A stretch of 64,000 bases of DNA, taken from IMG/VR virus record IMGVR_UViG_3300033049_000066, positions 124,001 through 188,000 of that record; one strand, 5' to 3'. The position numbers and the translations under genes are program-made. Of this stretch, positions 11,265 through 50,253 are shown in pieces. The notes under the pieces were generated by a model. That model had not been told where the DNA came from, did no database searches, and worked only from the letters and a program-made list of their open reading frames with translations. Position 1 is the first letter of the stretch; every line of letters starts with the position of its first letter.

Positions 11265-12086
11265 ATGATTAAAAACGTTTTTATCAGGACCCGGCCGGGC
11301 ATCGATCCGAACATCACCGACGGCCTGTTAATTGCCGTCGGTGATTGTATTCGTGAAGCTGGACTGTATATTATCACGCAGAAAGACGAAATAGATGATA
11401 GTACGCTGGTATTATCGCTAGGTGGTGATGGCACGATGATATCGTCGATTTACTTAGCATCAAATCGTGATTCTTATGTTGCTGGTTTTAACTACGGCGA
11501 TCTTGGCTATTTAGTGCCATGCACCGCGTCGTCTACTAACGATTTAATCGCGCAATTAACGGCATTAATAACCGATGTTAATTTTCCGGATTCGACTAAG
11601 TCGACATTTAAAGTAACAAAAGTTCATTTGCCGGTCCTAACCTGGAAGAAAAATCAAGCAATAAATGATTTTTATTTTACACCAGCAGCGAACGGGACAG
11701 CGGCGGATTTTAAAATTGCAATTGGATCGGTTAATGCCGCATTTCATACAAAAAGTTCCGGCATTGTACTTTCGACACCGTTTGGATCAACAGGGCTCGC
11801 GCTTTCTGCGGGTGGACCAATACTAACACCAGACAGCAATGTTTTAGAAATTGTACCATTATTACCGCATACTCTCACCTCGCGCCCGATAATATTCCCG
11901 TACACAGAGAAAGTGGTGATTACATGGGAACGTAAGATTAACATGTTTGCTGATGGTCATCTTATTGATACATTTGGAGATGGCGAGGTTGAGATCAAGT
12001 GCACCCAAGGGAAAATTAACCTCGTGCAGCCAGTCAACTGGAACTTTGTTGAGAATCTCAAAAACAAAATGCGTTGGCATTCGTAG
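11265..12086 (+). CDS. nadK: NAD kinase
   Basis: SLGGDGT, GDLGYL, IND, STPFGSTGLALSAGGPIL, PHTLTSRP. Confidence 0.92.
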   Translation: MIKNVFIRTRPGIDPNITDGLLIAVGDCIREAGLYIITQKDEIDDSTLVLSLGGDGTMISSIYLASNRDSYVAGFNYGDLGYLVPCTASSTNDLIAQLTALITDVNFPDSTKSTFKVTKVHLPVLTWKKNQAINDFYFTPAANGTAADFKIAIGSVNAAFHTKSSGIVLSTPFGSTGLALSAGGPILTPDSNVLEIVPLLPHTLTSRPIIFPYTEKVVITWERKINMFADGHLIDTFGDGEVEIKCTQGKINLVQPVNWNFVENLKNKMRWHS

Positions 12087-13191: not shown

Positions 13192-14190
13192 ATGAAAAAA
13201 ATTGTAAGAATGGTATTTGGTTCCCACATGTACGGATTAGATACGCCGAATTCTGATATGGACTACAAGGGTATTTACTTGCCGGACCTCGACGAGCTAT
13301 TGCTTGGTACGGCAGCGAAGAATATCAGTTTCACCACCGGCGATAACACGTCCAGGAATGGTGCTGAGGACGTCGACGAAGATTGGATGTCGTTGGGCGA
13401 GTTCATGAAGCTTGCGTTGAAGGGTGAGACTGTGGCACTGGATATGCTTCACGTGAATCCTGACTTGGTGAACGTCGAGCTTGATCCTGAATATGGTTAC
13501 ATTTGGACCGAGTTAGTTAAATTACGCCACTTGTTTTACACTAAGAATCTTAAATCTTACATGGGATACGTCAAGAAACAAGCAGCAAAGTACGGCCTCA
13601 AAGGTAGCCGCATTGCGAATATGCGCGAATCTATTAAAGTGCTTGAGCAGTTTAATGTAGAGCTACTGTTATCTGACGTATGGTACGGGCTGCCTGAGAA
13701 TGAATACGCTAAGAAGATTGAGATGCAGACAAAAACCGGCCAGACAAATCATTTCTACGAAGTGAACATGAAAAAGTATCAGGATACAAATTCTGTCGGA
13801 TATGCCCTGGAACGGATTCAAACCGCGCTGGATAGCTACGGTAATCGTGCTCTGCTAGCTGAGAAGAATGAAGGGGTTGATTGGAAAGCAGTCTCCCACG
13901 CTCTCCGTGCTGGATTTCAGTTGCGCGGCATTTTAAAGAGTGGTGGGTTTAGCTATCCACTCAAAGAAACCGAGTACCTCGCAAAAGTTAAGGCAGGTGA
14001 GCTTGATTACAAAACAGAAGTATCAAACGTGCTAGAAGCTGTAATTACGGAAATTGACGAACTTGTGTTAGTATCCGATTTACCGCAGACCGTAGATGTT
14101 AAATTTTGGAATAACTGGCTTTTGTTTGTGTACATGACTGCCCTGGCAGTACCGGACGTTAACAAATTTATGGAGGCACAAGATGAATAA
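13192..14190 (+). CDS. Phage nucleotidyltransferase (Nuc-transf-type)
   Basis: FGSHMYGLDTPNSDMDYKGIY; DWKAVSHALR. Confidence 0.85.
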   Translation: MKKIVRMVFGSHMYGLDTPNSDMDYKGIYLPDLDELLLGTAAKNISFTTGDNTSRNGAEDVDEDWMSLGEFMKLALKGETVALDMLHVNPDLVNVELDPEYGYIWTELVKLRHLFYTKNLKSYMGYVKKQAAKYGLKGSRIANMRESIKVLEQFNVELLLSDVWYGLPENEYAKKIEMQTKTGQTNHFYEVNMKKYQDTNSVGYALERIQTALDSYGNRALLAEKNEGVDWKAVSHALRAGFQLRGILKSGGFSYPLKETEYLAKVKAGELDYKTEVSNVLEAVITEIDELVLVSDLPQTVDVKFWNNWLLFVYMTALAVPDVNKFMEAQDE

Positions 14191-15867: not shown

Positions 15868-16336
15868 AATTTCAATCCCAGAAAAACGTGATCTACAGCG
15901 TTGGCGGGACATTGTGTGGTTTAAAATCAGTGGTGGATTTTCCTGTGATTGCGGAACTAAATCACAATTTAGTCATGCAAAATTTGAATCTTCAATATAC
16001 AATAAACGATTTATGTTTATGAATAACACCAAAAATGTATGCCCAGCTTGTACGCAAAAAGAATTTAACAAGAAAGCAACACTTGTATTCGATGAAAGTA
16101 ATTGCAAATGTGATTGGTGCGACGAAACAAAATCAACAATGTCAATGCCAAGACCCAAACATGTTAAAAGTGTAGTACACTTTGGCAGCAACTGGTGGAA
16201 TGGTCATCACATCTGCCAAGATTGTTTCAATCTTGCAATTGAAGGCCGAGGCCCAATACATAGCTCACGGACCAAGTACATAGACAAAGTCGAGTACAAT
16301 TTAAATGAATTAGGATTATGGATTAAAATGAAATGA
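15848..16336 (+). CDS. Cys-rich zinc-binding protein
   Basis: Several CxxC/CxC motifs. Confidence 0.65.
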   Translation: MTMKQIKISIPEKRDLQRWRDIVWFKISGGFSCDCGTKSQFSHAKFESSIYNKRFMFMNNTKNVCPACTQKEFNKKATLVFDESNCKCDWCDETKSTMSMPRPKHVKSVVHFGSNWWNGHHICQDCFNLAIEGRGPIHSSRTKYIDKVEYNLNELGLWIKMK

Positions 16337-16929
16337 GTCAATCAATAATATTCGTGGATGTGGATGGGCCACTTCTTCCTCGGAAAATGCACATGTTCCA
16401 TCAGAATCGGAAAACCGGCAAGGAGAACCATCCACAGTTTGATGAATTTGGAATCCGGGCGTTCAATCTGTGGGCAAAATACAGCCAGGCGAAAATTGTG
16501 CTCAGCACCGCGTGGTCGTGGGCGTACAGCACAGACGAACTTAAAGAAATTATGCTCGCGAATGGGCTCGGCTTTGATTACCATACTGAGATTTTAACCC
16601 CGAAGAAACAGACCAGCTCTCGGTCGAATGAAATTGTGTGGTGGCTACACGACAATGCCGAGCACGGTGATAAATTTATTGCGGTTGACGATGATACTAG
16701 CTGTCAGGATATTGCTGAGCTGCTAGAAAGTAATATCCGCCCTAGTCCGGCCAAAGGAGCATGGATACAGGTTGATTACGACAATGGTATGAGCTGGGAT
16801 AACTTTTTGGATGGTTGTGAAGTTCTTGGCATTGACTTGGATGAAATATACGAAAAAGAGTTTGGCATTAAGAAGCCTACTGAGAAGCAGAAAGCATTGA
16901 GGCACACCTACTTGGAATCATTGATATGA
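16333..16929 (+). CDS. HAD-domain protein (RNA-repair-associated HAD type)
   Basis: FVDVDGPL, IVLSTAW, RSNEI..WL, FIAVDD. Confidence 0.8.
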   Translation: MSQSIIFVDVDGPLLPRKMHMFHQNRKTGKENHPQFDEFGIRAFNLWAKYSQAKIVLSTAWSWAYSTDELKEIMLANGLGFDYHTEILTPKKQTSSRSNEIVWWLHDNAEHGDKFIAVDDDTSCQDIAELLESNIRPSPAKGAWIQVDYDNGMSWDNFLDGCEVLGIDLDEIYEKEFGIKKPTEKQKALRHTYLESLI

Positions 16930-17696: not shown

Positions 17697-17882
17697 GTTA
17701 TTTTTGGTTTCCGCACTAATTGGATAAATAAAACAAACGCTATTACAGTAATATCGAGTTGACAATAGAAAAAATGAAGTTACAATAACCAACTGTATAT
17801 AGTAGTAAGGCAACGCTGTTTTAGCGAATTGCGTTACAAAACAACAAGTTAACATTATTTCACGGAAATGTGCAATTAGAGG

Positions 17883-17999
17883 TTGACATTACTTGTAAAT
17901 GATTATATAATGTATGCAAGTTAAATAAAAGACGTTTACAAATTAATTTTAAATTAACTGTAAATAGAGGTTGACAGCGCTTACAAATCATTATATAAT
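17883..17999 (+). promoter_or_regulatory. Two tandem consensus sigma70 promoters heading the RNA island
   Basis: TTGACA-17-TATAAT at 17883-17911 and 17971-17999. Confidence 0.85.
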
Positions 18000-18026
18000 G
18001 TATGTAAGTTAAAACAGAGATACAAA

Positions 18027-18185
18027 ATGAGACAATTACATCTAATACAATTTAAACAATCGATAGCACTCATGCTAGGATGTATCTCACCCATTACGTC
18101 TTGGACACCGAGTTTCACATTAGCCACAGAGGCGAATAATGAACGAGGTTATGATGCTAACAGGGTTCTTGGAGCAAGTATGTAG
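18027..18185 (+). CDS. Putative 52-aa leader peptide
   Basis: MRQLHLIQFK...RVLGASM*; its 3' end overlaps the antiterminator strand. Confidence 0.5.
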   Translation: MRQLHLIQFKQSIALMLGCISPITSWTPSFTLATEANNERGYDANRVLGASM

Positions 18186-18210
18186 AAATTTAACATACTA
18201 AAAGTTTTAC

Positions 18211-18246
18211 AAGAACCCACAAACCGAAAGGAACGTGGGTTTTTTT
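18211..18246 (+). terminator. Intrinsic terminator with alternative antiterminator
   Basis: AACCCAC...GTGGGTT + U-tract; GGGTTCTTG(18163) can pair with CAAGAACCC(18210). Confidence 0.75.
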
Positions 18247-18249
18247 ATG

Positions 18250-18673
18250 AAATAAGTAAAAAAGAGGTTGACTTTAACTGTTATATGTCATATAATGTAT
18301 ATAACAGTTAGGAAACAAGCAAAAGATACAGATTAATTGTAAAATAAGTAAAAAAGAGGTTGACTTTAACTGTTATATGTCATATAATGTATATAACAGT
18401 TAGGAAACAAGCAAAAGATATTAGAAGTTAGGACTGTTTTTTATAATGTAGCTCAATGGTAGAGCTAGTGCAGATAGGTAATGTGGATTCTAGATTAAGC
18501 ATTATTGATAAACACGATCCGTACAACGGATGATCCTTGTTCGAATCAAGGCATTATAAAAAACAAGCTTAGCAGTTAGATAAAGATTAATTGTAAAATA
18601 AATGAAAAAGAGGTTGACTTTAACTGTTATATGTCATATAATGTATATAACAGTTAGGAAACAAGCAAAAGAT
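18250..18673 (+). repeat. Three copies of an ~80-bp direct repeat, each a promoter
   Basis: GAGGTTGACTTTAACTGTTATATGTCATATAATGTATATAACAGTTAGGAAACAAGCAAAAGAT with -35 at 18268, 18360, 18614. Confidence 0.9.
18435..18565 (+). ncRNA. tRNA-like RNA with extended acceptor and anticodon arms
   Basis: D arm TAGCTCAATGGTAGAGC, T arm CCTTG-TTCGAAT-CAAGG, 14-bp closing stem. Confidence 0.65.
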
Positions 18674-18869
18674 TTTCAAAGACGGTATATAATTTAAGAG
18701 CAAGCGGTGTAAATCCCCCTCACTTTATATAGCAACTCCGCCTAGAGATAAACACTAGATAAGCGGCCAGGCACGTGGGTATGAGGCTTAACAGTCATCC
18801 ACTAGAAAGGAACACAGGGTTGGTTTGTGAATACATAGCAAACCTCTTCATCCTGAATTGTTTTTGAAA
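18674..18869 (+). ncRNA. Candidate ~195-nt structured ncRNA
   Basis: 13-bp closing stem with G-U pairs; internal hairpins; no ORF. Confidence 0.45.
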
Positions 18870-18922
18870 TAAAAAGAAGTAACTGAACGGCCCGGTTACA
18901 AATAATAGGCCTAACAAATTTT

Positions 18923-18996
18923 ATCCCGGTAGTTTAATGGTAGAACACCAGGCTTTCAACTTGGTAACAGGGGATCGATACCCCTTCGGGATACCA
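18923..18996 (+). tRNA. tRNA-Glu(TTC)
   Basis: Cloverleaf; CCAGG-ctTTCaa-CTTGG; CCA. Confidence 0.9.
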
Positions 18997-19168: not shown

Positions 19169-19242
19169 CAGGGTGTGGGAAACCGGTAATCCGTGTGTCT
19201 TGGACACTCAAGAAGCGAGTTCGACTCTCGCCACCCTGACCA
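19169..19242 (+). tRNA. tRNA-Pro(TGG)
   Basis: CAGGGTG/CACCCTG acceptor; ctTGGac; CCA. Confidence 0.85.
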
Positions 19243-19247
19243 ATTTA

Positions 19248-19313
19248 AAAGTGTACTTAAAGTGTACTTAAAGTGTACTTAAAGTGTACTTAAAGTGTAC
19301 TTAAAGTGTACTT
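19248..19313. repeat. 11-bp tandem repeat (AAAGTGTACTT)x6
   Basis: Six perfect copies. Confidence 0.95.
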
Positions 19314-19456
19314 TTAAGGATGTTGTACCGCAGCTTCTAGCTGCAACGTTAGATGTCATAATGCGATTAGTCATTGCGTGAACCCGCCTAACGACGCGAA
19401 CGGAGATCGACTCCCGTTTTTGATGAAATTGCAAACGCATCCTTAAAAGTACATTT
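19304..19456 (+). ncRNA. Candidate multi-hairpin ncRNA closed by a 19-bp stem
   Basis: AAGTGTACTTTTAAGGATG / CATCCTTAAAAGTACATTT; internal GCAGC/GCTGC and CGTTAG/CTAACG. Confidence 0.6.
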
Positions 19457-20233: not shown

Positions 20234-20309
20234 TCCAGGTTAACGTTCAATGGTGAGACGTGCTCGACTGTTAATCGAGAGGAGACTGAATCGTTCTCAG
20301 TACCTGGAG
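20234..20309 (+). tRNA. tRNA-Asn(GTT), no encoded CCA, extended acceptor stem
   Basis: TCCAGGT/ACCTGGA; CTCGA-ctGTTaa-TCGAG. Confidence 0.75.
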
Positions 20310-21091
20310 CTCTGCTTATTATTATATTCATCAACTGAATTCTTTAGCGTTTCGTACGATATCGAACAGTTAGTTTTCTTTTGATTATTTTTGGTCCAGG
20401 ACATTAATTCACAATTTAGCGGGTGTTTTATATAATAAGGGTCGTATCCGTTACGGATTGCAGTATTTACAGAAACCTTATGATCTCGAGTAATTCCTGA
20501 TGTATTTGAATACGACCACATTCCGTGTTCTTTAAGTATGCTGTTGTATTGCTCAAACAATTCCGGATAATTAGATAATGAAAACGTAAACGCATATCTG
20601 TTTCGATTATTTCGTTTATATAGATATGCGTGGTCGTTACAATATTTTTGTTTAATTCGTGAAATAAATTTTTCATTACAATGAGCACACTTTGTTAACC
20701 AAATTTTTGAATATGGCGAAGTTACTTTAGGCTTCTTTACTTTAGGCTTCTTTACTTTAGGCTTTGCTGGGTATTTTTCTTTAAGTGTTTTGGACAATTT
20801 TTTATAATGTTCGGTATCTCGTGCAAGATTATTGCATGTAGCTGAACAACTCCTTGAGCAAAATTTATTATGTCGCTGGATATACGGTAACGCAATCTCG
20901 CAGTGTCTACAGGCATTAGGATTTTCGCTGTATTTAAAAAGAACTATCTTATGATTTTTGCGGATGGCGCTTAATGTAGATTTTGCGTTATTAATCTTGT
21001 GTTGGTGATAGCCGGACTTATGCACTTTATTATGAGCTGATAATCCATATACTGATTTAAATTCTTTATCGCATGTTTTACATTTATACAT
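20297..21091 (-). CDS. Free-standing HNH homing endonuclease with zinc fingers
   Basis: C2H2 finger, CRHC..FCSRSC, TRDHKVS..IKHPLNCEL..NNQK; ATAAATA upstream. Confidence 0.8.
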   Translation of the reverse strand: MYKCKTCDKEFKSVYGLSAHNKVHKSGYHQHKINNAKSTLSAIRKNHKIVLFKYSENPNACRHCEIALPYIQRHNKFCSRSCSATCNNLARDTEHYKKLSKTLKEKYPAKPKVKKPKVKKPKVTSPYSKIWLTKCAHCNEKFISRIKQKYCNDHAYLYKRNNRNRYAFTFSLSNYPELFEQYNSILKEHGMWSYSNTSGITRDHKVSVNTAIRNGYDPYYIKHPLNCELMSWTKNNQKKTNCSISYETLKNSVDEYNNKQSSRY

Positions 21092-21158
21092 GTAACTATT
21101 TATAATATTTTGAGGTTCCGTTAAACTTTCAGGAGCCAAATTACATATAAATACAGTT

Positions 21159-22045: not shown

Positions 22046-22723
22046 ATGAAAACATATTATACAATTTATCAAGTTACAAACCAAGTAAACGGCAAAACCT
22101 ATATAGGAGCACATAAGACCAAAAACTTGAATGATGGCTACATGGGGTCAGGTAAATACGTAAACCGTGCTATATCAAAGCACGGGATAGATAAATTCAC
22201 AAAAGAAATACTCTTTATATTTAATAGCGCAGCTGAGATGTACGAAAAAGAAGGTGAGCTAGTTAACGAAGAATTTATTACAGAAGCTAATACATATAAC
22301 TTAAAAATTGGCGGATTTGGCGGATTTGACTACATTAATCAAAACCCAGAAATGCAAAATAACAGAACACCCGAAAGTATCTCCAAGGGCGGCCAGACGA
22401 CATGGACCAAACACAAAAAACAAATAAAAACACGCCTTAAAGAAAATAACAAAAATTTATGGAAGTTTCACTACAGCAAAATGAAAGAGCTTTCTAAAAT
22501 CGGAGTAGCAGCAATGAGCTCCCCGGCCGCCGTGGCTAAGAAAAAACAAACATTTGCGAAAATATCGCACCAGCAAGGGATTCGCAATTCGCAATTCGGA
22601 ACGATGTGGATTACCGATGGTATTGTAAACAAAAAGATTAAAAAAACTACCCCAATGCCAACCGGGTTTCGTAAAGGTAGAGTATTAAAACCACACCAAA
22701 CTAAAAGAATTATTGAGAAGTAG
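22046..22723 (+). CDS. Free-standing GIY-YIG (Seg-like) homing endonuclease
   Basis: TIYQVTN..NGKTYIG..GYMGSG..E..YNL; C-terminal GTMWITDG..GFRKGR. Confidence 0.9.
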   Translation: MKTYYTIYQVTNQVNGKTYIGAHKTKNLNDGYMGSGKYVNRAISKHGIDKFTKEILFIFNSAAEMYEKEGELVNEEFITEANTYNLKIGGFGGFDYINQNPEMQNNRTPESISKGGQTTWTKHKKQIKTRLKENNKNLWKFHYSKMKELSKIGVAAMSSPAAVAKKKQTFAKISHQQGIRNSQFGTMWITDGIVNKKIKKTTPMPTGFRKGRVLKPHQTKRIIEK

Positions 22724-24057: not shown

Positions 24058-24130
24058 GTGATGCCGTAGCTCAGTTTGGGAGAGCTCCTGCAATGTAGGG
24101 TGTCGTTGGTTCAAATCCAACTAGCATCGC
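24058..24130 (+). ncRNA. Anticodon-less tRNA-like RNA
   Basis: Normal D and T arms; CCTGC-aat-GTAGG 3-nt loop; no CCA. Confidence 0.6.
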
Positions 24131-24818: not shown

Positions 24819-24894
24819 GCCCTCGTAAGTCAACTGGATAACGGCTGGTTTTCTACACCTCGCAATGGGAGTTCGAATCTCTCCTTGGGCGCCA
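24819..24894 (+). tRNA. tRNA-Arg(TCT), weak stems
   Basis: ttTCTac; T arm; GCCA. Confidence 0.65.
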
Positions 24895-26350: not shown

Positions 26351-26429
26351 GCCCTTGTATCCCCTCGGCCTCCTAAGCTGGTGAAAGGTAACTGGACACA
26401 TGCCGGTTCGACTCCGGCCAAGGGCACCA
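26351..26429 (+). tRNA. Non-canonical tRNA-Arg(CCT) lacking a normal D arm
   Basis: GCCCTTG/CAAGGGC-ACCA; CGGC-ctCCTaa-GCTG; perfect T arm. Confidence 0.65.
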
Positions 26430-32852: not shown

Positions 32853-32892
32853 ATTTTAGATGCATTATAATGCTCGTATGATAAATACCGTT

Positions 32893-33876
32893 ATGCCAAG
32901 ACATAAAAAAATCGCGCAAAGACATGCGAAAATTCTTAATATACAGAATCCCGCAACAGGGAAATTTGAGTTAGATAAAATTAAAACAAAATACGATAGA
33001 ATCCTTAAATACTCATTTGCGGAAATATATATTATAGACGCTGGAACTATGAAGTTCACCGAAGTCAGCGCAAACGCACTGCGGAACCTCGGCTACACGC
33101 TGGCGGAGATGCAGAAGATGAAGGCTGGTGACGTCGCACCTCAGCTTTCTGCCGGGCAATGTAACAAGATTTTTGTTGCGTTGAACAGTGGGGAAAATGA
33201 GGTCGCGAAGATGAAAACAGTTATTTTGCGCAAAGATGGATCAGAGTACAAAGTTAATCTTCGCGTACAGTACGCGAGTGGTGAAGACCCAGTGTACATC
33301 ATAATGGCGTCGGACATCACAGAACGTGACAGGTACGAAGCTGAGTTAAAAGCCCTTGCCTTCCGAGACCCCGGCACAGATTTGTACAATAGACGGTACT
33401 TCTTAGAACACCTTAGGGGAACGATAAACCATGCTAACAGAATGCACTCTCCTATTGGATTAATTTTAATCGACATGGATGATTTTAGTAAGGTCAATAA
33501 CAATTACGGACACATCGCTGGTGACAAGGTAATCTCAGATTTTGCAAATAAGATATGCGATGTATTTTCAAGGAAGACAGACGTCGTAGCAAGATACGGT
33601 GGGGATGAATTTGTAGTGCTGTGTATCGACAATTCCGCTGAAACATTAATCGCAAAATGTAACCAGCTTATAGCTCGACTAAACAAAGCATTGTACTACG
33701 ACGGTCACACAATTGTCCAAACCGCAAGCATAGGCATTTGCCACTACAACGCGAATGCTATAACAATCTCAACTGAGGATCTTATTAACGGTGCTGACAT
33801 TGCTATGTACAAGGCCAAGGCAGCTGGTAAAAATCAAGTCAAAATATGTAACAACGACGACCTCAATGAGGATTAA
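32893..33876 (+). CDS. PAS-GGDEF diguanylate cyclase
   Basis: PAS (..RKDGS..DITE), NRRYF, IDMDDF..VNN.YGH.AGD, RKTD I-site, RYGGDEF; start placed after ATAAATA. Confidence 0.92.
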   Translation: MPRHKKIAQRHAKILNIQNPATGKFELDKIKTKYDRILKYSFAEIYIIDAGTMKFTEVSANALRNLGYTLAEMQKMKAGDVAPQLSAGQCNKIFVALNSGENEVAKMKTVILRKDGSEYKVNLRVQYASGEDPVYIIMASDITERDRYEAELKALAFRDPGTDLYNRRYFLEHLRGTINHANRMHSPIGLILIDMDDFSKVNNNYGHIAGDKVISDFANKICDVFSRKTDVVARYGGDEFVVLCIDNSAETLIAKCNQLIARLNKALYYDGHTIVQTASIGICHYNANAITISTEDLINGADIAMYKAKAAGKNQVKICNNDDLNED

Positions 33877-33894: not shown

Positions 33895-34205
33895 ATTACT
33901 ATTTGAAGCTAAAGTAGGTTATCACGGACAAGGGTGCAAATCCCTTCATTTCCACCAAAAGCATCTTTTTACAAGGGTTCTTTTGGGGGATGATTTCAGA
34001 TTCGACGTGGGACTGAGGATAAGTGGATAGTACGGCAACGCAGAAGTCGTGACACTTGAAGAAGCAAACTTAAAATAATCGCAAACGATTCATTTTACAC
34101 TGAGGAATTAATGGCTGCGTAAAGCGCCACCCTCTGAGGTTGAAACAGCCTTATAACCAGCTTGTTAGTCGTGCCCTATTGACGAATGAACACAATGTAG
34201 GGGAC
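33895..34205 (+). ncRNA. ssrA: Circularly permuted (two-piece) tmRNA; tag ANDSFYTEELMAA*; outer boundaries approximate
   Basis: T arm + CATTTCC-ACCA (ends 33957) lies upstream of GGGGATG...GATTCGAC (33986); tag at 34081-34122. Confidence 0.88.
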
Positions 34206-48786: not shown

Positions 48787-50253
48787 ATGAACAAAATACA
48801 AAACATGTTCGCACCACAAGCGAACGACATAGCATACACAGAAGATAAGAAATTAAACATTAGCTTGATATGCAGAATTGACAGCTATAAATTTTCGCAT
48901 CCGTTTGCCTATCCGAACGATATAAACATTGATGGGATGACCTCATACGGTGAGACCCGCGTGTCACCAAAAGATACAATCGTTCCATTTGGTATGCAAA
49001 TGCTTCTTAAGCGTTATCTTACTCAGACAATTACAATGGCTGACATTGACGCGGCTGAGGATTTTAGCACCGCACATTTCGGCAGGACACTGTTTGATCG
49101 CAGTGCGTGGGAAAAAGTTGTCCGTGAATACGCTGGCAAGCTCCCGCTGATAATCAGAGCGGTTCCGGAAGGAACAGTCATGAATGGTAGCCAGCCCATC
49201 TACTCAGTTACAGTGCTAGACAGAGATTTGTTCTGGATGAGTGCCGGCTTTGAAACGCTCATCCAACGCGCGATTTGGTACCCGACGACGATTGCCACGA
49301 TGGATTACATCGTGCGCAATGAGATGGAAGCGTTCTACGATAAGACAGGGGCTGACAAATCTTTGCTCCCGTTCGCCCTGCATGATTTTGGAGGACGTGG
49401 GGTGAGCAGTGCGGAAACCGCCGAGATTGGTGGCGCCGCGCATCTTGTTAATTTTCTAGGCAGTGACACGGTCGAGGGCGTTCTTGCTGCGAATTTCTAC
49501 TACAAGGAAGAAATGAGCGGGTTCAGCGTGTACGCTACGGAGCATGCCATACAGTGTTCCTTCGGTAGCGGGACAGATGACGCGCTACGCTATCTTAGAC
49601 GACAGCTACGCAATGCCCCGCCGGGTTCCGTCGTAAGCATTGTTATTGACGGTTACGACGTGTATCGTGAAGCAAATCTACTATGCACCGTGATGAAGGA
49701 TGAGATTATCGCCAGCAAGGCAAAGGTCGTGTTCCGGCCGGACAGTGGGGACATGATGGAAATTATCCCTCGCTTGCTATTGATGCAATCAGAAGCATTC
49801 GGTACTACAAAAACTGCCGAGGGCTACTTACAAATAAATTATGTCGGGCTCATCCAAGGGGATGGAATTGACAGAGCGATTATTAGCGAGGTCTTGGATT
49901 TAGTTACGTTCTTGGGCTTTGCGGCTGATACGGTGATGTTCGGCAGTGGAGGCGCTTTGCTACAAAAAGTGAATCGTGACACGCTGAAATTCGCACAGAA
50001 GGCCTGCGCTATTCTCGTGGATGGTGAGTGGGTTGGTATCGCAAAAGACCCAATTACCGATCACGGTAAGAAGTCCAAGGAAGGGGTATTGACTCTCGCA
50101 AGAAATATCGAGAGTGGTGAGCTAACGACGGCGCGGTTAGACCAGGGGTCGTTGCCGGCGGGGATGGAAGACGCGATGAAGCTCGTGTACTTCAAAGGGG
50201 ATTTGTTCAATGAAATTACATTCGCAGAGGTCAGAAAAAATGTTATCAAGTAA
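48787..50253 (+). CDS. nadV: Nicotinamide phosphoribosyltransferase (Nampt)
   Basis: DSYKFSH, LHDFGGRG, GSDT, ATEH, RPDSGD, QGDG, FGSGGALLQ..NRDT, KDPITD..KKSK. Confidence 0.95.
   Translation: MNKIQNMFAPQANDIAYTEDKKLNISLICRIDSYKFSHPFAYPNDINIDGMTSYGETRVSPKDTIVPFGMQMLLKRYLTQTITMADIDAAEDFSTAHFGRTLFDRSAWEKVVREYAGKLPLIIRAVPEGTVMNGSQPIYSVTVLDRDLFWMSAGFETLIQRAIWYPTTIATMDYIVRNEMEAFYDKTGADKSLLPFALHDFGGRGVSSAETAEIGGAAHLVNFLGSDTVEGVLAANFYYKEEMSGFSVYATEHAIQCSFGSGTDDALRYLRRQLRNAPPGSVVSIVIDGYDVYREANLLCTVMKDEIIASKAKVVFRPDSGDMMEIIPRLLLMQSEAFGTTKTAEGYLQINYVGLIQGDGIDRAIISEVLDLVTFLGFAADTVMFGSGGALLQKVNRDTLKFAQKACAILVDGEWVGIAKDPITDHGKKSKEGVLTLARNIESGELTTARLDQGSLPAGMEDAMKLVYFKGDLFNEITFAEVRKNVIK

What the first reader, a model, noticed from the sequence alone, without database searches (positions are those of the whole stretch)
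18027..18246. Leader-peptide attenuator at the head of the tRNA island
Seen: two consensus promoters, a 52-codon ORF, then a terminator (AACCCAC..GTGGGTT-U tract). GGGTTCTTG in the last codons (18163-71) is perfectly complementary to CAAGAACCC (18210-18) in the terminator 5' arm. Inference: a ribosome reaching the stop masks the antiterminator and transcription ends; stalled translation, for example after host tRNA cleavage, allows read-through into the RNA genes. Caveat: three more promoters lie downstream.
Basis: partly seen in the sequence, partly recalled or inferred. Interest (0 to 1): 0.68.

Follow-up and report, generated by a model that had tools for sequence, protein, structure and literature searches.

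The report
Leader ORF terminator switch before phage tRNAs
A short translated reading frame, followed by two mutually exclusive RNA hairpins (one ends transcription, the other prevents that), sits at the head of the tRNA gene island of an uncultured marine jumbo phage and is conserved in at least seven related phage lineages, so it is probably a real regulatory switch and not a chance pattern.

Summary
There are two 12/12 promoters, a 52-codon ORF (18027-18185) and a hairpin plus U7 terminator (18214-18246). A perfect 9-bp complement links 18163-18171 to 18210-18218. No shuffle reached 9 bp (0 of 2000), and the duplex energy gives p about 0.001.

Protein searches recovered seven more lineages on uncultured-phage contigs. 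All keep:
- a promoter, SD and AUG;
- an open 50-58-codon frame;
- the 8-9-bp antiterminator helix;
- a hairpin that holds the stop codon;
- a terminator.

The antiterminator shows a C-G to U-A double change in two lineages that lie on opposite sides of the element's tree. The stop hairpin and the terminator stem covary freely.

The conservation is at the RNA level, not the protein level. Differences are even over the three codon positions, and 88% of conserved-residue codons are identical, against 52% in the neighbouring gene.

In the relatives, a conserved unknown RNA and then tRNA-Glu and tRNA-Pro follow the terminator with no good promoter between. The three downstream promoters are an insertion special to this phage.

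The best reading is a ribosome-coupled transcription attenuator that gates the RNA island. Dependence on translation, and any link to tRNA cleavage, remain untested inference.

The parts
17759..17786 (+). Promoter-like site P0 (TTGACA, 16-nt spacer, TACAAT; 11/12)
17883..17911 (+). Promoter P1 (12/12). It belongs to the phage's AGAGGTTGAC...TATAAT early promoter family.
17971..17999 (+). Promoter P2 (12/12). The predicted transcription start is about 18006.
18014..18026 (+). 5' UTR with the purine-rich SD-like AGAGA (18016-20), 6 nt before the AUG. An equivalent AGAGAGA or AAGGA is kept in all relatives.
18027..18185 (+). Leader ORF of 52 codons. The frame is open in 8 of 8 lineages, the sequence is constrained at the RNA level, and the peptide is not under amino-acid selection.
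18075..18104 (+). Predicted internal hairpin: CUAGGAUGU (18075-83) pairs with ACGUCUUGG (18096-104), built from invariant nucleotide blocks. The 8-sequence consensus fold pairs these bases otherwise, so this hairpin is tentative.
18107..18149 (+). Internal helix ACC-GA-GUUU (18107-15) with GAAC-GA-GGU (18141-49). The tip varies in length and covaries; it is deleted in L054.
18163..18171 (+). Antiterminator 5' strand (region 2), GGGUUCUUG, in codons 46-49
18177..18199 (+). Hairpin AGUAUGU/ACAUACU holding the stop codon UAG (18183-85). It is structurally conserved with five different stem sequences.
18210..18218 (+). Antiterminator 3' strand (region 3), CAAGAACCC. It overlaps the terminator 5' arm.
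18214..18246 (+). Intrinsic terminator: stem AACCCAC/GUGGGUU, inner CC-GAAA-GG, then U7
18256..18680 (+). Insertion special to this lineage: three copies of the early promoter cassette (18268-96, 18360-88, 18614-42) and a tRNA-like gene (about 18443-18559). It lies between the terminator and RNA X.
18676..18880 (+). Conserved structured RNA X of unknown kind. In the relatives it is the first gene after the terminator.
18923..18996 (+). tRNA-Glu, the first tRNA of the island. tRNA-Glu then tRNA-Pro is also the order in the relatives.

Best explanation
This is a ribosome-coupled transcription attenuator at the head of the phage's stable-RNA island (RNA X plus tRNAs).

Proposed mechanism:
1. Strong early sigma-70-type promoters start a roughly 240-nt structured leader that carries a 52-codon ORF.
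2. As RNA polymerase leaves the ORF, region 2 (18163-71), the stop-codon hairpin (18177-99) and region 3 (18210-18) fold into an antiterminator. This antiterminator sequesters the terminator 5' arm, so polymerase reads on into the RNA genes.
3. If the lead ribosome keeps pace and is on the last roughly 10 codons or at the stop, it melts the hairpin and keeps regions 2 and 3 apart. The terminator (18214-46) then forms and transcription ends.
4. Slow, stalled or absent translation therefore raises read-through, and efficient translation lowers it.

Shown: the elements, their mutual exclusivity, their near-equal stability, their conservation and covariation, the conserved open frame with RNA-level constraint, and the conserved position in front of RNA X and the tRNAs.

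Inferred: that ribosomes decide between the two folds, the direction of the response, and any physiological trigger.

In this particular phage, three inserted promoters downstream probably reduce the attenuator's control to a modulating contribution.
For: 1. Not chance. The 9-bp complement was matched by 0 of 2000 shuffles, and the duplex energy gives p about 0.001.

2. Folding. Nascent-transcript folds adopt the antiterminator in all 8 lineages (-16.7 to -21.8 kcal/mol). Full-length folds adopt the terminator (-14.9 to -19.6).

3. Covariation.
- The antiterminator has 8 bp in 8 of 8 lineages. One position is C-G in six and U-A in two, L044 and L058 (17 of 500 shuffles reach the observed score).
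- L044 and L058 are the least similar pair (53% identity) and lie on opposite sides of the main split (support 94/98). The double change therefore probably happened twice.
- The terminator stem is CCCAC, CCCGC, CCCGG or CCCGA, each with a matching 3' arm.
- The stop hairpin has five different stem sequences.

4. The ORF.
- The SD and AUG are kept.
- The reading frame has no stops, against 2-8 stops in the other two frames.
- In the protein-guided alignment every gap inside the ORF is a whole number of codons; this is built in by that method and all lineages were found as open frames, so it carries little weight.
- The stop codon always lies at the top of the 5' arm of the hairpin, 11-18 nt after region 2 and 20-27 nt before region 3.

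5. The peptide is not selected as a protein.
- Differences by codon position are 20/14/16. In the neighbouring HAD_SAK_2 gene they are 75/63/120.
- 88% of degenerate conserved-residue codons are identical, against 52% in that neighbour (Fisher p = 0.001).

6. Synteny. Upstream lies an HAD_SAK_2 gene. Downstream of the terminator come RNA X within 15-30 nt, then tRNA-Glu and tRNA-Pro. No promoter scoring 11/12 or better lies between them in L048, L050, L051, L052, L057 or L058.

7. Expression. A homologue of the ORF region lies on a 223-nt contig of a sediment metatranscriptome. It was found by nucleotide similarity, and its frame is open in both visible ends.
Against: - No experiment or strand-specific read data shows termination at 18246 or read-through that depends on translation. 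Only Logan contigs could be laid.
- There is no run of codons for one amino acid, and codon usage is ordinary: a CAI-like value of 0.71 against 0.75 +/- 0.04 for the phage's genes.
- No anti-antiterminator or pause helix (1:2) is conserved. The RNAalifold candidates differ between the 5- and 8-sequence alignments and are absent in the window.
- A ribosome at the stop would physically cover only part of region 2.
- All full homologues were found through protein searches, which favours open frames.
- In the window three 11/12 promoters follow the terminator. In L044 a convergent T5orf172 gene follows it.
- The strong nucleotide conservation and internal helices would also fit an RNA domain that senses a ligand or a protein.
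Confidence: 0.52

Rival explanations
1. The element is a riboswitch-like or factor-binding leader. The conserved structured domain inside the 'ORF' (the invariant blocks and their helices) binds a small ligand, a tRNA or a protein. That binding, not the ribosome, decides whether region 2 is free to form the antiterminator. The open frame is secondary or incidental.
For: - Conservation is at the nucleotide level, with no third-position excess.
- Invariant blocks pair with each other. One helix has a tip of variable length, and a tandem G-A internal loop is conserved.
- The element is much better conserved than the neighbouring protein genes. Between L050 and L054 the leader is 96% identical, against 66% amino-acid identity for HAD_SAK_2.
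- RNAalifold proposes that region 2 can also pair with upstream segments. One such pair changes together with the C-to-U change in L044.
Against: - There is no Rfam family match at any useful score, T-box included.
- The SD, AUG, open frame, whole-codon gaps in the protein-guided alignment (built in by that method) and the fixed position of the stop codon in the hairpin are kept in all lineages. A pure riboswitch does not need these.
- The proposed closing helix is weak, is not the same in the 5- and 8-sequence folds, and is absent in the window.
Confidence: 0.2
2. The element is a stand-alone early transcription unit: a small mRNA or a small structured RNA with its own promoters and a leaky terminator. 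The region 2:3 pairing only sets a fixed terminator efficiency, or it stabilises the 3' end of the released RNA. The downstream RNAs receive a constant share of read-through or use their own promoters.
For: - The promoter and 5' UTR resemble about 50 early cassettes of this genome that drive small ORFs of 48-170 aa.
- In the window the RNA genes have their own consensus promoters.
- In L044 the terminator is followed by a convergent T5orf172 gene.
- The two folds are nearly equal in energy, so a fixed partition between them is plausible.
Against: - Selection on the peptide as a protein is not seen.
- A functionless alternative helix would not be expected to keep 8-9 bp in 8 of 8 lineages with two probably independent compensatory changes.
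- Nor would it be expected to keep the stop codon in the intervening hairpin.
- In six relatives, RNA X begins 15-30 nt after the U-tract, leaving no room for a separate promoter.
Confidence: 0.22
3. The complementarity is a chance match next to an ordinary terminator.
For: The same 20-base pattern occurs three times inside unrelated coding sequences in IMG/VR, about the number expected by chance for a collection of that size (my estimate).
Against: Shuffles of the local sequence give p about 0.001. The pairing is conserved with covariation in seven further lineages.
Confidence: 0.02

Closest known systems
Classical leader-peptide transcription attenuators of enterobacterial amino-acid operons (trp, his, leu, thr, ilv, pheA); from established knowledge
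   Same: A promoter-proximal short ORF with an SD, mutually exclusive antiterminator and intrinsic terminator, and an antiterminator 5' strand placed so that a ribosome at the end of the ORF interferes with it. The weak, non-significant best plus-strand Rfam hits were Trp_leader (E = 4) and Thr_leader (E = 4.9). They reflect a similar shape only.
   Different: - The ORF is 50-58 codons, not 14-32.
- There are no tandem regulatory codons.
- No conserved 1:2 pause or anti-antiterminator hairpin was found.
- The stop codon sits in its own conserved hairpin between regions 2 and 3.
- The genes downstream are stable RNAs of a phage, not biosynthetic enzymes.
Ribosome-mediated attenuators that sense general translation stress, for example the Bacillus subtilis bmrB leader (about 54 codons) before bmrCD, and leaders of ermK, vmlR and lmo0919; from my own knowledge, not checked here
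   Same: A longer leader ORF without amino-acid-specific codon runs. Slowed or stalled ribosomes favour an antiterminator, and read-through rises when translation is impaired.
   Different: Those examples gate resistance proteins in Firmicutes and respond to antibiotics. This element gates a phage tRNA and small-RNA island, and its leader RNA is itself highly structured and conserved at the nucleotide level.
T-box riboswitches (tRNA-sensing transcription antitermination)
   Same: A terminator/antiterminator platform that links transcription read-through to the state of the tRNA pool, if the proposed biology is right.
   Different: There is no T-box sequence, specifier loop or Stem I architecture, and no Rfam hit. 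A translated ORF is present. The genes downstream are tRNAs, not aminoacyl-tRNA synthetases.
The ordinary early gene cassettes of this same phage (promoter, conserved 5' UTR, small ORF)
   Same: The same promoter family and a similar 5' UTR with a purine-rich SD 27-40 nt after the -10 element.
   Different: Intrinsic terminators are rare in the window, and this is one of the few convincing ones. This cassette also carries a conserved alternative helix, and its ORF is conserved at the RNA level rather than the protein level. Other cassettes were not checked one by one for these features.

Membership tests
Leader-peptide (ribosome-mediated) transcription attenuator | A short ORF with a ribosome-binding site in the 5' leader, upstream of an intrinsic terminator | tested here: met
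   The ORF is 18027-18185, with AGAGA 6 nt before the AUG. The terminator is 18214-46. The same layout is present in 8 of 8 lineages.
Leader-peptide (ribosome-mediated) transcription attenuator | A mutually exclusive antiterminator (2:3) and terminator (3:4), supported by comparative evidence | tested here: met
   The two structures share 5 bases. The nascent fold is the antiterminator in all lineages. Both helices covary.
Leader-peptide (ribosome-mediated) transcription attenuator | The ORF end is placed so that a translating or terminating ribosome prevents the antiterminator | tested here: inconclusive
   Region 2 ends 11-18 nt before the stop, and the stop lies in the hairpin between regions 2 and 3. 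A ribosome on the last roughly 10 codons covers region 2. A ribosome at the stop covers only 1-4 of its bases but must melt the hairpin.
Leader-peptide (ribosome-mediated) transcription attenuator | Regulatory codons (runs of codons for the sensed amino acid), as in the classical amino-acid type | tested here: not met
   There is no codon run, and codon usage lies within the range of the phage's genes. The element therefore fits the general translation-sensing subtype, if any.
Leader-peptide (ribosome-mediated) transcription attenuator | A pause or anti-antiterminator hairpin (1:2) | tested here: inconclusive
   RNAalifold proposes different upstream partners for region 2 with 5 and with 8 sequences. 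None is kept in the window.
Leader-peptide (ribosome-mediated) transcription attenuator | Downstream genes depend on read-through (no promoter of their own) | tested here: inconclusive
   In the relatives, only 9-10/12 matches at chance level lie between the terminator and the tRNAs, and RNA X starts 15-30 nt after the U-tract. In the window, three 11/12 promoters intervene.
Leader-peptide (ribosome-mediated) transcription attenuator | Read-through responds to translation of the leader | not testable with these tools
   This needs reporters, in vitro coupled assays or Term-seq. Only assembled contigs could be laid.
Riboswitch (any Rfam class, T-box included) | A match to a curated aptamer model | tested here: not met
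   No family reached a useful score in the window or in L051.
Small phage protein gene (for example a lipoprotein of the T5 Llp kind) | Purifying selection on the amino-acid sequence, and a signal peptide with a lipobox | tested here: not met
   There is no third-position excess, and synonymous sites are frozen. There is no Pfam match. The M-L-G-C motif is preceded by only about 7 hydrophobic residues, which is too short for a typical signal peptide (sequence; my judgement).

The most novel reading that the evidence does not exclude
A family of uncultured marine jumbo phages gates transcription of its tRNA and small-RNA island with a translation-capacity sensor. When the lead ribosome lags on a structured leader ORF, for example because tRNAs are depleted or cleaved by host defences, the antiterminator forms and the phage makes more of its own tRNAs and RNA X. 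This would be a direct feedback from tRNA supply to tRNA gene transcription, sitting next to RNA-repair genes.
Probability: 0.35. Interest if true: 0.8.

Novelty: new variant of a known kind. Interest (0 to 1): 0.62.

Why it matters
Phage tRNA arrays are now seen as counter-measures to host anticodon nucleases and tRNA depletion (for example PMC11464382, listed and not read in full). How their expression is controlled is hardly known.

A conserved leader-ORF attenuator in front of such an array would be the first cis-regulatory device of this kind that I know of for phage stable-RNA genes; three literature searches found none. It would link translation status to tRNA gene transcription, and it gives a compact element of about 240 nt that can be tested with reporters.

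It also shows that some 'hypothetical small proteins' in metagenomic catalogues are RNA-level elements. And it points to an adjacent, widespread and uncharacterised structured RNA (RNA X).

Tried and rejected
- DNA searches of the INPHARED phage collection with the window region (near and distant modes) and with a relative's leader plus RNA X found nothing. No cultured phage carries the element.
- Homologues of the upstream 256-aa protein in IMG/VR (27-36% identity) are not syntenic and carry no peptide homologue.
- The pattern GGGTTCTTG...CAAGAACCCAC in IMG/VR gave three chance hits inside coding sequences.
- The pattern had a gap range (9-15) too short to match even the window, where the gap is 18. 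That blank result is uninformative.
- The pattern had two window-specific bases, so it could not match the L050 type.
- Later patterns gave nothing in IMG/VR. They gave one chance hit in a methyltransferase-like CDS (L047) and one in a bacterial CDS (L060).
- The word search with the window peptide alone found only itself. The homologues came from the HMMER representative search and from searches seeded with P0002 and with the alignment.
- P0003 and P0004 are repetitive, low-complexity proteins and were discarded.
- Relatives cannot be drawn for a virus record. Five larger related records lack the conserved blocks.
- The idea of rare or sensor codons was tested and dropped.
- The lipoprotein idea was dropped (and the short hydrophobic region).
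- MAFFT columns were not structurally consistent for the stop hairpin, so that hairpin was compared sequence by sequence in a script.
- Read laying returned only assembled contigs, so RNA ends, strand and level could not be read.

Full report
**Context.** The window is bases 124001-188000 of a 293-kb IMG/VR virus record, linear and about 83% complete. It is an uncultured jumbo phage whose sequence is held by two seawater metagenomes.
- The window carries 25 tRNA genes found by ARAGORN and a few more found by Rfam, plus a permuted tmRNA.
- RNA-repair-type genes lie just upstream of the finding: RlaP at 13192-14190 and HAD_SAK_2 at 16333-16929.
- The genome holds dozens of copies (about 35-50, depending on the stringency of the match) of a nearly invariant early promoter cassette: AGAGGTTGAC, 17 nt, TATAAT, then a conserved 5' UTR with a purine-rich SD. 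These usually drive small ORFs of 48-170 aa.

**The observation.**
- The two promoters score 12/12.
- The ORF is 52 codons.
- The terminator is AACCCAC...GTGGGTT followed by T7 (-14.9 kcal/mol).
- GGGTTCTTG (18163-71) is the exact complement of CAAGAACCC (18210-18), which shares five bases with the terminator 5' arm.
- Dinucleotide shuffles of the 100 nt upstream never reached 9 bp (0 of 2000), and they reached the observed duplex energy in 0.1% of trials.
- Folding the growing transcript shows the alternative helix, extended by four pairs and enclosing a 7-bp hairpin (18177-99) that contains the stop codon. This is the minimum-energy structure as soon as 18218 is made.
- The terminator wins only in the complete transcript. 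The two states are within about 2 kcal/mol of each other.
- Convincing intrinsic terminators are rare in this window, and this is one of them.

**Relatives.** DNA searches of cultured phages found nothing. An exhaustive HMMER search with the 52-aa product found one 56-aa relative. Word searches seeded with that relative and with an alignment found eight more products.
- Their contigs define seven further lineages: L056, L044, L058/L059, L057, L050 with L048, L049 and L051, L052/L053, and L054/L055.
- A ninth, partial homologue was seen by nucleotide similarity on a 223-nt contig of a sediment metatranscriptome. Its frame is open in both visible ends.
- All eight full lineages keep a sigma-70-type promoter, a purine-rich SD (AGAGAGA or AAGGA), an AUG and a 50-58-codon frame. 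The frame has no stops, against 2-8 stops in the other two frames.

**The switch is conserved.** A per-sequence analysis shows the same layout in every lineage:
- region 2 is GGGUUYUU(G), ending 11-18 nt before the stop;
- a hairpin holds the stop codon at the top of its 5' arm;
- region 3 is (C/A)AARAACCC, beginning 20-27 nt after the stop;
- the terminator ends in U5-7.

The nascent transcript folds into the antiterminator in all eight lineages (-16.7 to -21.8 kcal/mol). The terminators score -14.9 to -19.6 kcal/mol.

The covariation evidence is as follows.
- The terminator stem is CCCAC, CCCGC, CCCGG or CCCGA, each with a matching 3' arm. One column shows C-G three times, A-U three times and G-C twice.
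- The stop hairpin uses five unrelated stem sequences.
- The antiterminator has eight invariant-length pairs. One position is C-G in six lineages and U-A in L044 and L058 (17 of 500 shuffles reach the observed score).
- L044 and L058 are the most dissimilar pair (53% identity) and fall on opposite sides of the main split of the element's tree (support 94/98). The double change probably arose twice.
- In the coding frame this change is Leu to Phe. A non-synonymous change in the ORF is thus matched by a change in non-coding RNA.

**Translated, but not a protein gene in the usual sense.** Between the window and L050, differences fall evenly on the three codon positions (20/14/16). In the neighbouring HAD_SAK_2 gene of the same two phages they fall 75/63/120.
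- 88% of degenerate codons for conserved residues are nucleotide-identical, against 52% in that neighbour (Fisher p = 0.001).
- L050 and L054 differ by 34% in HAD_SAK_2 protein but by 4% in the leader.
- The invariant nucleotide blocks pair with each other in consensus folds. One helix (18107-15 with 18141-49) has a conserved tandem G-A loop and a tip that varies in sequence and length. The tip is deleted in L054.
- Selection therefore acts on the RNA and on keeping a frame open, not on the peptide. This is what a regulatory leader ORF predicts.
- One caveat applies. The full homologues were found through called proteins, which favours open frames, and the whole-codon gaps are partly a product of the protein-guided alignment. 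Only the metatranscriptome fragment escapes the first bias.

**What lies downstream.**
- In L048, L050, L051, L052, L057 and L058 the U-tract is followed within 15-30 nt by a conserved structured RNA ('RNA X'; window 18676-18880).
- In those contigs where tRNAs could be read, tRNA-Glu and tRNA-Pro come next (L048, L050, L051, L057; Glu alone on the short L052); on L058 a homing-endonuclease-like gene and tRNA-His follow.
- The only promoter-like matches in between score 9-10 of 12, at chance frequency.
- Most of those just after the terminator lie inside RNA X, and the TATAGT/TATAAT of the best one sits in a covarying helix (helix read by eye from the sequences).
- In those phages, read-through of this terminator is therefore the obvious way to transcribe the head of the island.
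- In L044 a convergent T5orf172 (GIY-YIG-like) gene follows the terminator before the contig ends. In L056 about 90 nt are inserted.

**Mechanism.** The most economical reading is ribosome-coupled attenuation.
- With no ribosome, or a lagging one, regions 2 and 3 pair and polymerase reads through.
- With a ribosome on the last roughly 10 codons or at the stop, the hairpin is melted and the strands are kept apart. The terminator then forms.
- No amino-acid-specific codon run exists, and codon usage is ordinary. If the element senses anything through the ribosome, it senses general translation pace.
- From my own knowledge, this resembles the bmrB/bmrCD-type attenuators more than the trp type.
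- The link to host tRNA cleavage is attractive, given the neighbouring RNA-repair genes and current views of phage tRNAs. It is conjecture.

**Rivals.**
- A ligand-, tRNA- or protein-binding leader would explain the RNA-level conservation equally well. It does not explain the conserved SD, AUG, frame and stop position, and no Rfam model matches.
- A stand-alone small transcript with a leaky terminator fits this phage's cassette architecture and the downstream promoters. It does not explain why an alternative helix and a stop-codon hairpin are maintained by compensatory change.
- Chance is excluded for practical purposes.

**Verdict.** I file it as a new variant of ribosome-mediated transcription attenuation, in a new setting at the head of a phage tRNA and small-RNA island. 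My confidence in the mechanism is about 0.5.

Noticed in passing
window 18676-18880 (also L051:2210-2410, L052:452-660, L057:588-800, L058:2372-2590): 'RNA X' is a structured RNA of about 190-200 nt with long invariant stretches and compensatory changes. One example is ACGUGGGUA/CAUCCACU, which becomes ACGCGGGGA/CAUCCGCU in L057. It has no Rfam match. Pieces of it lie on contigs from a cold-seep metagenome (X8) and two sediment metatranscriptomes (X18, X19) that were laid. About 19 runs from 16 studies, including those three, hold a similar small share of the stretch's words, which is probably this RNA. It looks like an undescribed, widespread phage small RNA.
   Followed up: partly
window 18443-18559: A tRNA-like gene that ARAGORN and Rfam do not call. 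It has an acceptor stem, D arm and T arm (CCTTG-TTCGAAT-CAAGG), but about 67 nt of extra structure where the anticodon arm should be (fold z = -4.2). It has its own promoter cassette and is absent at the equivalent position (between the terminator and RNA X) in the relatives examined.
   Followed up: partly
whole genome G000; in the window for example 8585, 12131, 37644, 37972, 38515, 52941, 53674, 60321, 61787: Dozens of near-identical copies (about 35-50, depending on the stringency of the match) of an early promoter cassette: AGAGGTTGAC, 17 nt, TATAAT, then GTATATAACAGTTAGATAA.GAGCAAAGGA..ATG. Most drive small ORFs. Three copies (18256-18680) drive RNA genes instead.
   Followed up: partly
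window 33897-34122: A permuted (two-piece) tmRNA gene inside the tRNA island (Rfam RF04321, 81.7 bits, E = 1.4e-14).
   Followed up: no
window 19237-19324: A tandem array of about seven copies of an 11-nt unit (AAAGTGTACTT), directly after tRNA-Pro.
   Followed up: no
window 13192-14190, 16333-16929; L048, L050, L054, L058: RNA-repair-type genes (RlaP; the HAD domain of 'Swiss Army Knife' repair proteins) lie just upstream of the leader. HAD_SAK_2 is syntenic with the leader in most relatives, often together with a DNMK-family kinase gene.
   Followed up: partly
window 32860-33876, 48787-50253, 11265-12086: Auxiliary genes in and around the island: a PAS-GGDEF diguanylate cyclase, a nicotinamide phosphoribosyltransferase (NAMPT) and an NAD kinase.
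   Followed up: no
window 22046-22723 (+), 20297-21139 (-); L044:416-679 (-); L058:2610-3179: Homing-endonuclease-like genes (GIY-YIG/SegE-like, a C2H2 zinc-finger protein, T5orf172, NUMOD3) are scattered between the tRNA genes. They differ between lineages, which suggests mobile insertions that reshuffle the island.
   Followed up: no
L048:2114-2341, L049:2336-2533, L050 downstream of 5171: Some JGI contigs of one study carry internal tandem duplications in the leader (57 nt and 27 nt, both in frame) and in RNA X (about 42 nt). They may be assembly artefacts or real length variants. They were left out of the comparisons.
   Followed up: partly
window 24060-24129, 24819-24891, 26351-26426: Additional tRNA-like matches from Rfam (40.5, 26.7 and 29.4 bits) that ARAGORN did not list.
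   Followed up: no
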